From assembly GCA_002269645.1 (NCBI GenBank), contig NIVC01000035.1, positions 124,001-188,000 of the forward strand: DNA of 64,000 nucleotides, written 5' to 3'. The notes under the pieces were generated by a model. It was given only the letters and a program-made list of their open reading frames with translations, was not told where the DNA came from and ran no database searches. This document shows, in pieces, positions 4,256 through 51,300 of this stretch (positions within the stretch are counted from its first letter, which is position 1; each line of letters opens with the position of its first letter). The translations under genes were made by a program, and so were the position numbers. The DNA is from Macrostomum lignano. Its lineage: Eukaryota.

Positions 4256-5943
4256 ATGTCCTACCTTGTGCCTCCGTCGGCCAGCCAGTACGTGCCTTCG
4301 CAGAGCATCCACTCCATGCCGGATGCGGTGCTCCTGGCTCCACCGGCTCATTCGGCGCAGACCGAGCGTCGAGTCAGCAGTCCGGAGACTTCCTCCACGG
4401 CGGACGCGAACCCGGGCCCGTCTGGCTCGGGAAAGTCAGCGGCCGCCTGCGGTAGCAGTCGGCACGGCCATCAGCATCAGACGCCGGAGTTTCTCCTTGT
4501 TGTGCCGGACGCCTGCGGCTCTTCCGTGTCAATGTCAGGCTCGGGCGCCCTGCTGCCGCCTGACGAGATTGACAGATTCGAGCGGGCGATCAACGAGAAC
4601 GACGCCGACTTGGTGAAGCTGATCGTCCGCCGGCACGCCCTCGGCCTGTGCCAGCGTCGCTGCTCCCCGGCAGCGTCAACCAATTTGGCGCAGGAGGACG
4701 CTGCATCTCGAGTTGCGTTTTCCATCATGACGGACGTCGAGGTTCTTCCGGTCTCGGCTAGTCAGGCATTTCTGCTCCGATCGCGCAATAACTCGGCCGT
4801 CAGCGATCAGTATTCGTTTTTCACTGACGACGAACCGGCGTTAGGCACCGACGGCTCCCTGCCCGAGGTCGCGGCGCCGTCCTGCGCAACTGCCTGCACT
4901 CTGCCATCGCGTCCGACTCCGTCGACTGCCTGCACGCCCTCCTCCGCATGGGCTTCGAGCCAAATCGCTGCGGCCAGATTGTCAACTGGCAGCCGTTCTC
5001 CCGCTGGCTTCAACAGGAGCTGCGCCGCTGCACGACCCGCAGCCCGACGGCTGATAGCAGCTCGCCGCTGCCGGAGCTCAGCTTCGAGCACGCGTCCCGG
5101 ATCGAGTCGCTTCGTAGAGCAATCTGTGCCGCACTGGGAGACGCAGACCCCATGGAGCAGGTGGCCTTCCTGCGCTGCCTGGTGCAGGCCAAGCCGTACA
5201 GAGACTTACTGTGCGGCTCTCCGCCCATCCTGCTCGCCACTCTGCTCAACAAGAAGCGCAGCGTCTCCTTGCTGCTCCGCTACGGAGCCAAAGTCAACGT
5301 GCACGACTGCCTGCACAATTCGGCACTGCACCTGGCGGTCTTCAACCTGCCGGAGTCGACCAGCATTCTGCGGCTGTTGCTGGCGAACGGAGCTTCAACC
5401 TGCTGCCGCAACTGCCTCGGCATCAGTCCGAACAACATTGACGGTGTGACTCTGCGGCAGGAGTCGCAACTGCTGATCAAAGCGGCACTGAGCTTCTCGT
5501 TTGCGTCGCGTTCAGCCGCAGGAGCATCCGGGGGTCCTGGAGGTCGCCGTCGACAGCAGCAGCAACAACAACAGCAGCAGCAGCAGCAGTCGCAGAAATC
5601 CGGCAGTGCGCATCAGAAACGTTCGCGCTGGCAGGCGGCCACAAAGCTGGCCAAGGAGCGCGGCTTCCTCGGACGATCGGCCGCGGCAGCCGCCGGATCC
5701 GAACGCAGCGAGTCGGTCAGCATGTCCTTCACCGATTCGGAGGTGGCGGCCGGCATGTCGATTGTCACTTCGACCGGCGTCTCGGGCTGTCCCGGCTCCG
5801 CTGCTGGTGCAACGTCGGCGACTCTGACCTCGACAACAGGCGCCACGGCGGCTGCTGCCGCGGCTGCTGTCGTAGCTTCGTCGACCAACAGCGCCACGGG
5901 TACCAGGATCCTCTCTGGCCCTGCTGCCGCCGCTGCCAATGAG
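4256..5943 (+). CDS. Ankyrin-repeat exon (first coding exon of the PLC-epsilon model, or a stand-alone gene ending at TGA 6027); 1-nt frameshift near 4866
   Basis: ATG 4256 with an upstream in-frame TAG at 4190. Ankyrin-like repeats [53 protein letters not shown] and [26 protein letters not shown]. Donor GAG|GTCAGT at 5943/5944, after which composition becomes AT-rich. Confidence 0.8.

Positions 5944-51300: not shown

What the first reader, a model, noticed from the sequence alone, without database searches (positions are those of the whole stretch)
4256..51300. A roughly 4,000-aa PLC-epsilon with ankyrin, REM and FERM modules upstream of the RasGEF-PLC-RA core
Seen: the exons splice in frame into ANK, helical region, REM, FERM(F2,F3), CDC25, PH, EF, X/Y, C2, RA1, RA2. 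Known: vertebrate PLC-epsilon (about 2,300 aa) and C. elegans PLC-1 are described as CDC25-PH-EF-X/Y-C2-RA-RA, without ankyrin or FERM domains. ANK plus FERM is the KRIT1-type pairing, and KRIT1 is a Rap1 effector. Inference: this could be a scaffold-type PLC-epsilon that couples cortical or junctional anchoring to Rap/Ras exchange and PIP2 hydrolysis. I cannot tell whether other invertebrates already have this architecture annotated.
Basis: partly seen in the sequence, partly recalled or inferred. Interest (0 to 1): 0.85.

Follow-up and report, generated by a model that had tools for sequence, protein, structure and literature searches.

The report
Flatworm long-form phospholipase C epsilon gene
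The window holds the Macrostomum lignano copy of a giant (about 3,800-3,950 aa) phospholipase C-epsilon with ankyrin, armadillo-like and talin-like FERM modules in front of the usual RasGEF-PLC-RA core; the modules are real and belong to one gene, but the same architecture is already present in database entries from nematodes, arthropods, acanthocephalans and echinoderms, with fragments in molluscs.

Summary
A chain of about 33 canonical GT-AG exons (one GC-AG) from 4256 onward encodes ANK, an armadillo-like helical region, a split REM-like segment, FERM F2-F3, CDC25/RasGEF, PH, EF, PLC X/Y, C2 and RA1-RA2.

- **Domain support:** Pfam scores exceed the curated cut-offs for Ank, FERM_M, RasGEF, PI-PLC-X/Y, C2 and RA. 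The F3 exon folds as a talin-type PTB lobe.
- **One gene:** Proteins of 3.3-3.7 kaa from Auanema, Mesorhabditis, Trichinella, Adelges, Rhipicephalus, Pomphorhynchus and Asterias are colinear with the model, most of them over every module. A mayfly CDS and a near-identical public protein join the F3 exon to the first CDC25 exon exactly at 33400|35945.
- **Not supported:**
  - The architecture is not new. It is widespread in public annotation, usually as "uncharacterized protein".
  - The FERM is talin-like and lacks F1, so it is not KRIT1-like.
  - REM has no HMM support.
  - The last 3.5 kb (48523-51300) has no homology support. A stop at 47788-47790 followed by AATAAA at 47821 is a plausible true end.
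- **Sequence defects:** The window carries two 1-nt homopolymer deletions relative to transcript-derived ORFs.
- **Still of interest:** Chordate PLC-epsilon lacks the N-terminal half, and I found no paper describing the long form.

The parts
4256..5445 (+). First coding exon: N-terminal about 100 aa plus ankyrin repeats (model aa 1-397). Needs one C restored in the CCC run at 4862-4864.
   Evidence: Pfam Ank_2 6e-9, Ank 3e-8, Ank_3 3.4e-5. P0121 is 100% identical on both sides of the frame shift. Seven orthologs hit this exon by tblastn.
5743..5943 (+). Low-complexity linker exon. The intron 5446-5742 is 297 nt, in frame, and open if retained.
   Evidence: Spliced this way in P0122; P0121 appears to use a different acceptor near 5730, which shifts the frame.
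13149..14537 (+). Three small linker exons: 13149-13221, 14280-14337 (needs one T restored at about 14305-14308) and 14468-14537.
   Evidence: Exon order taken from P0122, which derives from the near-identical second copy. Canonical splice sites are present in the window. No ortholog support.
15093..19869 (+). Armadillo-like helical region (model aa 532-1026) in exons 15093-15280, 17626-18510, 19369-19615 and 19706-19869.
   Evidence: P0122 links the ANK exons to 15093-15280, ending at the donor AAG|GTAAGT. Eleven to 13 orthologs hit 17626-18510 and 19369-19615. The family profile A3 finds only armadillo/HEAT-type repeat proteins in the PDB (Vac8, UNC-45, KAP3), best E 0.004.
22569..24312 (+). 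REM-like helices split by about 390 aa of low complexity. The N part is near 22700-22790 ([16 protein letters not shown]) and the C part near 24000-24150 ([17 protein letters not shown]...). The 50-nt 'intron' 23334-23383 and the exon 24241-24312 are uncertain.
   Evidence: Both motifs are conserved in orthologs. There is no RasGEF_N Pfam hit and no REM hit in the PDB. hhalign against SOS1 REM is colinear but has probability 4.7%.
25515..32737 (+). FERM F2 lobe in exons 25515-25757, 30753-30929 and 32624-32737 (model aa 1563-1740).
   Evidence: Pfam FERM_M 9.5e-9, 36.1 bits against a cut-off of 23.8. PDB phmmer best hit is talin-2 F2-F3 at 5.3e-9. P0181 and P0189 join these exons.
33097..33400 (+). 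FERM F3 (PTB-like) lobe in a single exon (model aa 1741-1842). Donor TTG|GTGAGC; read-through would stop at 33436-33438.
   Evidence: AlphaFold2 pLDDT 76.7, pTM 0.66, a beta-sandwich (six strands called) with a C-terminal helix. Foldseek top hits are talin F3, TMt 0.72 against isolated F3. Fourteen orthologs hit the exon.
35945..38186 (+). CDC25-homology RasGEF domain (model aa about 1860-2115) in exons 35945-36204, 37241-37386 and 37710-38186, with a GC-AG intron at 36205-37240.
   Evidence: Pfam RasGEF 1.5e-11. The mayfly protein P0125 aligns colinearly from F2/F3 into CDC25 (39% identity, E 5e-84). P0189 joins 33400|35945 exactly. GC donor.
38365..43187 (+). Poly-Q linker, the PLC-epsilon-type PH region and the first EF-hand region, in exons 38365-38422 (doubtful), 38685-39032, 39388-39611, 41815-42097 and 42611-43187.
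   Evidence: blastp and family HMM colinearity with the PH and EF regions of PLC-epsilon proteins, chordates included. There is no Pfam PH hit.
43819..45710 (+). EF-hand-like region, PI-PLC X, an acidic/low-complexity X-Y linker and PI-PLC Y in one 1.9-kb exon. P0001 splices out 44877-45185.
   Evidence: Pfam PI-PLC-X 1.4e-61, EF-hand_like 3.6e-4, PI-PLC-Y 3e-32. 99% identity to A0A1I8HHU3. The catalytic-site motifs SSHNTYL and VIYHG are readable in the translation.
45868..46704 (+). C2 domain and linker in exons 45868-46026, 46123-46225 and 46349-46704.
   Evidence: Pfam C2 1.3e-8. Eleven orthologs hit each exon.
46780..47790 (+). RA1 and RA2 domains plus tail. With no further splicing the ORF stops at 47788-47790; AATAAA lies at 47821.
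   Evidence: Pfam RA 4.1e-12 for RA2. The family RA HMM covers both domains. Stop codon and poly(A) hexamer.
48523..51300 (+). Unverified.
   Evidence: Only coding-potential score and frame compatibility support them. No ortholog hit and no Pfam hit.

Best explanation
This is one protein-coding gene, the Macrostomum lignano ortholog of a 'long-form' phospholipase C-epsilon found in many non-chordate animals.

**Shown.** The module order is ANK repeats, armadillo-like region, REM-like helices, talin-like FERM F2-F3, CDC25 RasGEF, PH, EF, PLC X/Y, C2, RA1, RA2. This order is colinear with 3.3-3.7 kaa proteins from nematodes, an insect, chelicerates, an acanthocephalan and echinoderms.

**Inferred from what is established for mammalian PLC-epsilon.**
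- GTP-bound Ras/Rap binds RA2 and brings the enzyme to membranes.
- The X/Y barrel hydrolyses PI(4,5)P2 to IP3 and diacylglycerol.
- The CDC25 domain activates Rap, which sustains the signal.

**Inferred from fold only.**
- The N-terminal 1,850 aa act as a targeting and regulatory scaffold.
- The F2-F3 pair keeps the tryptophan that aligns with the talin F3 'RW' motif. It is invariant in 23 family sequences. It probably docks on acidic lipid and/or NPxY-type cytoplasmic tails.
- ANK and ARM repeats probably bind partner proteins.

A shorter N-half-only product that ends just after F3 may also exist.
For: **Species.**

**Exon chain.**

**Domains.** Pfam hits are above the curated cut-offs.

**FERM.** Talin-like by sequence, and by fold both for the window's own F3 exon and for the spider ortholog's F2-F3.

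**Single gene.**
- P0122 joins ANK to exon 15093-15280, which is already part of the conserved helical region.
- The mayfly CDS P0125 spans F2/F3 into CDC25.
- P0189 joins window exons at 33400|35945, and P0181 joins the F2/F3 exons.
- Long orthologs are colinear with the model, most of them over all ten modules.
- Eleven of 13 carry Ank + FERM_M + RasGEF + PLC in Pfam.
- Every tblastn hit of the orthologs falls inside a model exon.
- There is no AATAAA or ATTAAA in the 2.5-kb F3-to-CDC25 intron.

**Conserved F3 tryptophan.**
Against: - No M. lignano cDNA covering the whole gene was available. P0189 is of unknown origin and contains frame-shifted stretches, so it may be a gene prediction rather than a transcript.
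- M. lignano makes polycistronic precursors that are resolved by SL trans-splicing (PMC5730564). An internal trans-splice site cannot be excluded from the DNA alone.
- The window needs two 1-nt corrections to read through.
- Several junctions are weak: 23333/23384, 38365-38422, and everything after 47734.
- The function of the N-terminal half is inferred from fold alone.
Confidence: 0.85

Rival explanations
1. There are two genes in one transcriptional unit. An ANK-ARM-FERM scaffold protein ends just after F3 at the stop at 33436-33438. A conventional PLC-epsilon starts at the acceptor at 35945 by SL trans-splicing. The 4,000-aa ORF would then be only a frame-compatible artefact.
For: - About 7% of assembled M. 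lignano transcripts are multi-gene precursors.
- The Forkhead-ANK fusions P0121 and P0122 show that such joins occur at this very locus.
- Steinernema carpocapsae has N-half-only isoforms that end after FERM (P0170, P0295).
- Older tick annotation splits the gene, though before the FERM (P0292 ANK-ARM; P0293 FERM to RA), not at this point.
- P0178, a likely paralog, reads through the F3 donor.
- Many insect RefSeq models start at CDC25.
Against: - The F3 donor and the CDC25 acceptor are canonical and phase-compatible.
- P0189 and the mayfly P0125 read across this exact junction.
- Ten or more species have single models that span it.
- The intron contains no poly(A) hexamer.
- The CDC25 exon has only about 20 codons upstream of the domain.
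Confidence: 0.08
2. This copy is a decaying duplicate (pseudogene) of the functional gene, because M. lignano is a hidden polyploid. The two frameshifts would be real.
For: - There are two 1-nt deletions relative to the transcript-derived ORFs.
- A second copy, 96-99% identical, exists (P0122).
- Hidden polyploidy is stated in the abstract of PMC10468722.
Against: - Both lesions lie in homopolymer runs, which is typical of long-read assembly error.
- P0121 is 100% identical to the window on both sides of the first lesion.
- No other stop or frameshift occurs in about 3,900 codons, including long conserved exons.
Confidence: 0.07
3. The N-terminal half is a KRIT1-type ANK-FERM Rap1 effector fused to PLC-epsilon.
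For: - ANK and FERM occur in the same protein.
- KRIT1 FERM structures appear among the Foldseek hits for the spider ortholog's F2-F3 (E 1.6e-7).
Against: - No KRIT1 hit by sequence at E<=10, while talin scores 5e-9.
- Talin F2F3 ranks first by fold, with TMt 0.74-0.77 against 0.42-0.45 for KRIT1.
- There is no F1 lobe, and F1 forms part of the Rap1-binding surface in KRIT1.
- ANK and FERM are separated by an ARM-like region and about 1,150 residues.
Confidence: 0.05

Closest known systems
Long-form PLC-epsilon predictions in public databases, e.g. Trichinella britovi KRY51589.1 (3,268 aa, named PLC epsilon-1), Adelges cooleyi XP_050438662.1 (3,632 aa), Rhipicephalus microplus XP_075732545.1 (3,505 aa), Asterias rubens XP_033632686.1 (3,526 aa), Pomphorhynchus laevis KAI0989877.1 (3,560 aa)
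   Same: Same module order from ANK to RA2 and similar length. Identity is 25-55% in the conserved blocks. FERM_M and Ank are detected by Pfam in 11 of 13.
   Different: M. lignano has longer low-complexity inserts: poly-Q, poly-A and Gly-rich stretches, and about 390 aa inside the REM-like segment. It also has a possibly longer C-terminal tail. Most of these entries are named 'uncharacterized' or 'hypothetical'. None has been studied experimentally as far as I could find.
Chordate PLC-epsilon (PLCE1). Frog, lamprey, eel and amphioxus proteins were examined here; mammalian PLCE1 is from my own knowledge.
   Same: The CDC25-PH-EF-X/Y-C2-RA1-RA2 core is colinear, with 38-54% identity in X/Y.
   Different: Chordate proteins have 280-890 residues before CDC25 that match none of the ANK, ARM, REM-like or FERM family HMMs at E<1e-3.
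Talin head F2-F3 (PDB 3G9W, 1MK7, 6U4K)
   Same: Best sequence match (5e-9) and best fold match. The conserved Trp aligns with the talin F3 'RW' motif.
   Different: There are no F0/F1 lobes and no rod. About 20% identity. Integrin or PIP-kinase binding has not been tested.
KRIT1/CCM1 (ANK-FERM Rap1 effector)
   Same: ANK repeats and a FERM-type module occur in one chain. F2-F3 is fold-similar.
   Different: ANK does not abut the FERM, F1 is absent, and there is no sequence-level hit.
RasGEFs with a domain inserted between REM and CDC25 (Epac/RAPGEF: REM-RA-CDC25). From my own knowledge.
   Same: A REM-like helical segment, then an inserted module, then CDC25.
   Different: The insert here is FERM F2-F3 rather than an RA domain, and REM identity is unproven.

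Membership tests
PLC-epsilon (PLCE1/PLC-1 orthologs) | PI-PLC X and Y catalytic halves with the catalytic histidines | tested here: met
   Pfam PI-PLC-X 1.4e-61 and PI-PLC-Y 3e-32. SSHNTYL and VIYHG are readable in the translation.
PLC-epsilon (PLCE1/PLC-1 orthologs) | CDC25-homology RasGEF domain N-terminal to the PH-EF-X/Y core | tested here: met
   Pfam RasGEF 1.5e-11 at model aa about 1930-2050, upstream of X/Y.
PLC-epsilon (PLCE1/PLC-1 orthologs) | C2 followed by two RA domains at the C-terminus | tested here: met
   Pfam C2 1.3e-8 and RA 4.1e-12 for RA2. RA1 is recognised only through family homology.
PLC-epsilon (PLCE1/PLC-1 orthologs) | Closest relatives are proteins named PLC-epsilon rather than other PLC classes | tested here: met
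   The top non-Macrostomum hits of the X/Y exon that carry a descriptive name are named PLC epsilon-1; many others carry only 'hypothetical' or 'unnamed' labels. PLC-eta comes only after about E 1e-77.
PLC-epsilon (PLCE1/PLC-1 orthologs) | Ras/Rap-stimulated PIP2 hydrolysis and Rap GEF activity | not testable with these tools
   Requires biochemistry.
Long-form PLC-epsilon (ANK-ARM-FERM-CDC25-PLC-RA) | All ten modules colinear in one polypeptide | tested here: met
   blastp and the module-HMM table for at least ten species. The junction is supported by P0125 and P0189.
FERM domain | F2 (acyl-CoA-binding-like helical lobe) | tested here: met
   FERM_M 36.1 bits against a cut-off of 23.8.
FERM domain | F3 (PTB/PH-like lobe) | tested here: met
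   AlphaFold2 of the window exon, then Foldseek with talin F3 as top hit. The Pfam IRS/PTB hit is only sub-threshold.
FERM domain | F1 (ubiquitin-like lobe) | tested here: not met
   No FERM_N hit in the model or in the 13 orthologs. Only about 25-40 residues lie between the REM-like helix and F2.
KRIT1-type ANK-FERM | ANK repeats packed directly against a three-lobed FERM whose F1/F2 surface binds Rap1 | tested here: not met
   ANK ends at aa about 390 and F2 starts at aa about 1565. There is no F1. No KRIT1 sequence hit.
REM (RasGEF_N) | Match to a REM profile or to a solved REM | tested here: inconclusive
   No Pfam RasGEF_N hit in the model or in 13 orthologs. The family profile A2 finds no REM in the PDB. 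hhalign against SOS1 REM (sequence verified) aligns both halves in order, but with probability 4.7%. Foldseek aligns the spider REM-to-CDC25 model with SOS 1XDV over 713 columns at rmsd 31.8.
Armadillo/HEAT repeat | Match to ARM-repeat profiles or structures | tested here: inconclusive
   No Pfam hit. The family profile A3 finds only ARM/HEAT-type repeat proteins in the PDB, but weakly: Vac8 at E 0.004, UNC-45 and KAP3 at about 0.03.

The most novel reading that the evidence does not exclude
The long form may be the ancestral animal PLC-epsilon. Its order is ANK, ARM-like, REM-like, talin-type F2-F3, then CDC25, PLC and RA.
- It is present in Ecdysozoa, Spiralia and Ambulacraria.
- A sponge transcript already carries ANK-FERM-CDC25 without the PLC half.
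- It lost its N-terminal 1,500-1,850 residues in chordates and in some other lineages.

All experimental work has used the short form, so the long form has gone undescribed in the literature. M. lignano is transgenic-tractable and would be a place to test what a talin-like lipid/tail-binding module does to a Ras/Rap-regulated PLC.
Probability: 0.5. Interest if true: 0.5.

Novelty: new member of a known kind. Interest (0 to 1): 0.35.

Why it matters
For genome annotation, this is a correct 3.8-3.95 kaa model for a locus that public M. lignano proteomes hold only as fragments: a 612-aa PLC piece, 163-273-aa FERM pieces and Forkhead-ANK chimeras. It also flags two assembly indels.

For PLC-epsilon biology, it adds a flatworm to a broad but apparently unstudied set of long-form enzymes. 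Their N-terminal halves (ANK, ARM-like, talin-like F2-F3) are absent from the chordate proteins on which the mechanistic picture is largely based. That raises a testable question: how do membrane or tail docking through F2-F3 and Ras/Rap input through RA2 combine?

It does not reveal a new kind of system.

Tried and rejected
1. **Raw ORFs against Pfam.** This gave only ANK and weak FERM/PTB hits. Spliced slices were needed.
2. **k-mer-limited protein search with concatenated N-terminal exons.** It found only the Forkhead-ANK chimeras. The search with CDC25+PH found a single mayfly fragment, which became the key query.
3. **Spliced query to the search of protein representatives.** I used P0125 instead.
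4. **First DP gene model with strict splice thresholds.** It skipped the F3 exon, the first CDC25 exon, the PH exon and the RA1 exon. Relaxed thresholds and a GC donor fixed this.
5. **My first placement of exons 14280-14337 and 14468-14537.** It broke the frame. The cause was a missing T in the window.
6. **REM tests.** Pfam, a PDB profile search and hhalign all failed to give significance.
7. **The look-up of encoding contigs for P0189 and P0181.** No contig is on record, so their origin (cDNA or prediction) stays unknown.
8. **E. danica locus L001.** The 10 kb upstream holds no further homologous exons, so it did not help with the N-terminal half.
9. **Literature searches for PLC-epsilon with FERM or ankyrin.** None described this architecture. 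A locust PLCe1 paper lists only PH, X/Y, C2 and RA.
10. **Pfam on ORFs outside the gene.** Nothing meaningful, only a sub-threshold Atrophin-1 low-complexity hit.
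Full report
**Source and first look**

The window is eukaryotic. It is rich in minisatellites, and its ORFs come in exon-sized pieces. The 1.9-kb ORF at 43794-45725 is 99% identical to UniProt A0A1I8HHU3, a 612-aa 'phosphoinositide phospholipase C' fragment of the flatworm Macrostomum lignano. Its next-best named relatives are PLC-epsilon proteins of many animals.

**Gene model**

No gene finder was available, so I proceeded in steps.
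- I trained a codon log-odds score on confident exons, masked tandem repeats, and ran a splice-aware dynamic program on the + strand.
- With relaxed thresholds it returns a frame-consistent chain from 4864 to 51300. Nearly every junction is a textbook site, such as ...ttttcag|, AAG|gtaagt or CAG|gtgagt.
- I then added the ATG exon start at 4256.
- I added two small exons taken from a transcript-like protein.
- I added a GC-AG intron (GAG|GCAAGC, 36205-37240) that restores a conserved 'KDLIxRxxE-VSSW' stretch.

The final draft is 3,957 aa in about 33 exons.

A frame-compatible chain can always be found by such a program. The evidence that matters is therefore the independent support described below.

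**Two defects in the window**

P0121 (740 aa) and P0122 (1,020 aa) are transcript-like ORFs held in a public protein set. Relative to them, the window lacks one C in a C-run at 4862-4864. It also lacks one T in a T-run near 14305-14308. P0121 is 100% identical to the window on both sides of the first lesion. Long-read assembly error is therefore the likeliest cause. A decaying duplicate cannot be excluded.

**Domains**

Pfam on spliced slices gives the following.

| Family | E-value | Note |
|---|---|---|
| Ank_2 | 6e-9 | |
| Ank | 3e-8 | |
| FERM_M | 9.5e-9 | 36.1 bits against a cut-off of 23.8; spans three exons |
| IRS-type PTB | 6e-3 | sub-threshold; F3 |
| RasGEF | 1.5e-11 | |
| EF-hand_like | 3.6e-4 | |
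| PI-PLC-X | 1.4e-61 | |
| PI-PLC-Y | 3e-32 | |
| C2 | 1.3e-8 | |
| RA | 4.1e-12 | |

On unspliced ORFs the FERM_M hit was only 0.0075. The gain on splicing is itself support for the exon joins.

By sequence, the FERM region matches talin-2 and talin-1 F2-F3 best in the PDB (5e-9). Myosin VIIa and kindlin-2 follow. KRIT1 does not appear at E<=10.

The single F3 exon (33097-33399) was folded with an alignment of relatives. It gives a beta-sandwich with a C-terminal helix (six strands called; pLDDT 76.7, pTM 0.66). Its best PDB matches are talin F3 structures, with TM 0.72 against isolated F3.

**Is it one gene?**

Three independent lines say yes.

1. *Transcript-like ORF.* P0122 joins the ANK exon through 5743-5943, 13149-13221, 14280-14337 and 14468-14537 to 15093-15280. 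It stops exactly at an AAG|GTAAGT donor. That last exon already belongs to a block conserved in orthologs, the 'MAxNxECL' motif.

2. *Reads across the critical junction.*
   - A mayfly (Ephemera danica) GenBank CDS, P0125, aligns colinearly with the model from the end of F2 through F3 into CDC25 (39% identity, E 5e-84). Its exons lie in that order in its genome.
   - P0189 is a 273-aa public protein identical to the window in blocks. It joins 30783-30866, 32624-32737, 33097-33400, 35945-36189 and 37277 onward. It therefore reads '...NSLEF|DLHRRN...' across exactly the predicted F3|CDC25 junction.
   - P0181 joins the three F2/F3 exons.
   - The origin of P0189 and P0181 could not be traced.

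3. *Long orthologs.* An exhaustive HMMER search with P0125 returned 697 relatives.
   - The long ones are colinear with the model, most of them over all ten modules: ANK, helical, both REM-like blocks, FERM, CDC25, PH, EF/X, Y/C2 and RA.
   - The full-length forms are Auanema sp. (3,482 aa), Mesorhabditis spiculigera (3,532), Trichinella britovi (3,268/3,337, named PLC epsilon-1) and Steinernema carpocapsae (3,089).
   - They continue with Adelges cooleyi (3,632), Rhipicephalus microplus (3,505), Parasteatoda (2,661), Pomphorhynchus laevis (3,560) and Asterias rubens/amurensis (3,526/3,663).
   - Partial forms come from molluscs, Saccoglossus and Neoechinorhynchus.
   - Pfam on 13 of these proteins finds PLC-X/Y and RasGEF in 13, Ank in 11, FERM_M in 11, RA in 10 and RasGEF_N in none.
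   - Every tblastn hit of these proteins in the window falls inside a model exon.

As a minor point, the 2.5-kb F3-to-CDC25 intron contains no AATAAA or ATTAAA.

**What the N-terminal half is**

- *Helical region.* The region at aa 532-1026 has no Pfam hit. A profile of the family finds only armadillo/HEAT-type repeat proteins in the PDB (Vac8, UNC-45, KAP3), and weakly (best E 0.004).
- *REM.* The 'REM' consists of two conserved helical blocks...HP(V/I)ILLRLLxH(K/R)L... and ...LLExW...DF...EFL...W.... About 390 low-complexity residues separate them in M. lignano. The blocks line up in order with the two halves of SOS1 REM, but the hhalign probability is only 4.7% (SOS1 sequence verified). Neither Pfam nor a PDB profile search supports REM. 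I call it REM-like and unproven.
- *Spider ortholog model.* An AlphaFold2 model of the spider ortholog's REM-like-to-CDC25 segment has mean pLDDT 68, with F2, F3 and CDC25 mostly above 80. Its best PDB matches are talin F2F3 (TMt 0.74-0.77). Kindlin, KRIT1 (TMt 0.42-0.45), merlin/moesin and SOS follow.
- *No F1 lobe.* Only about 25-40 residues separate the REM-like helix from F2.
- *Conserved tryptophan.* The Trp that aligns with the talin F3 'RW' motif is invariant in 23 family sequences.

**Ends of the gene**

*5' end.* In P0121 and P0122 the ORF stays open upstream of the ATG at 4256. It passes through an acceptor at 4193 and a 15-nt tandem-repeat exon (about 2416-2669) into a Forkhead domain that lies outside the window. 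About 7% of assembled M. lignano transcripts are multi-gene precursors resolved by trans-splicing (PMC5730564). Orthologs begin about 10-130 residues before the first ankyrin repeat. I therefore take this as a precursor artefact and keep 4256 as the start.

*3' end.* The conserved sequence ends with RA2. Without further splicing the ORF stops at 47788-47790, and an AATAAA follows at 47821. The two exons that extend the model to 51300 rest only on coding score and frame. The protein is therefore about 3,800 aa (end at 47790) or 3,957 aa (end at 51300).

**Comparison with what is known**

Chordate PLC-epsilon proteins (amphioxus, lamprey, frog, eel) share the CDC25-to-RA core. They match none of the N-terminal family HMMs. 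A sponge (Oscarella) transcript carries ANK, FERM and CDC25 matches, with weaker ARM and REM-like-N matches, and has no PLC half. Steinernema has N-half-only isoforms that end after F3. Many insect RefSeq models begin at CDC25. Tick annotation went from split models to a merged one.

The long form is thus widespread and visible in databases, mostly as 'uncharacterized protein'. Three full-text searches found no paper describing it. A 2025 locust paper lists only PH, X/Y, C2 and RA for PLCe1.

**Verdict**

- The KRIT1 analogy is not supported, because the FERM is talin-like F2-F3 without F1.
- REM is unproven.

The mechanism I commit to is a Ras/Rap-regulated PLC with a Rap-GEF feed-forward, inferred from mammalian PLC-epsilon. 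Its extra N-terminal half serves membrane, tail and partner docking, inferred from fold. A possible short N-half isoform is speculative.

Noticed in passing
window 2416-2669 and 4193; proteins P0121, P0122: Two public transcript-like ORFs run from a Forkhead DNA-binding domain (encoded outside the window) through a 15-nt tandem-repeat exon into the ANK exon, in frame. This happens in both near-identical gene copies. It is probably a polycistronic precursor rather than a real Forkhead-PLC fusion.
   Followed up: partly
window 4862-4864 and about 14305-14308: One-base deletions in homopolymer runs (CCC against CCCC, TTTT against TTTTT) relative to the transcript-derived ORFs. Each breaks the reading frame.
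   Followed up: yes
window 47788-47821 and 50962-51300: Read-through of the RA exon stops at 47788-47790, and AATAAA lies at 47821. The 112-aa ATG ORF at 50962-51300 has a good coding score but no homolog or Pfam hit. It may belong to another gene.
   Followed up: partly
window 36205-37240: A GC-AG intron (GAG|GCAAGC...tttcag|GTC) fits the ortholog alignment better than any GT donor nearby.
   Followed up: yes
window 5446-5742: A 297-nt intron that is in frame and open if retained. P0122 splices it out at 5743, while P0121 appears to use a different acceptor near 5730 that shifts the frame.
   Followed up: partly
window 33401-35944: The 2.5-kb intron between the FERM F3 exon and the first CDC25 exon contains no AATAAA or ATTAAA. 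My rough estimate is that a few would be expected by chance at this base composition.
   Followed up: no
window 11.1-14.2, 16.8-17.6, 18.5-19.3, 20.7-21.5, 26.8-28.3 and 30.9-31.5 kb: The introns are packed with minisatellite arrays that stay open in several frames and produce ORFs of 200-500 aa on both strands. Strand skew is extreme, with GC skew 0.72 at 26-28 kb.
   Followed up: no
proteins P0002 and P0178: M. lignano appears to have a second, diverged PLC-epsilon-like gene. P0002 is 63% identical in X/Y. P0178 is 57-60% identical in F2/F3, and its model reads through the F3 donor into the intron.
   Followed up: no
proteins P0170/P0295 (Steinernema carpocapsae) and P0273 (Oscarella pearsei): N-half-only products exist elsewhere. 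The nematode has isoforms that end right after FERM F3. A sponge transcript has ANK, FERM and CDC25 but no PLC half. This hints at alternative termination, or at an ancestral unfused state.
   Followed up: partly
locus L001 (Ephemera danica KZ497590.1) 10001-30278: The mayfly annotation splits the gene. A 431-aa partial F2/F3-CDC25 product is followed by a separate 1,661-aa product that starts 2.7 kb downstream.
   Followed up: no
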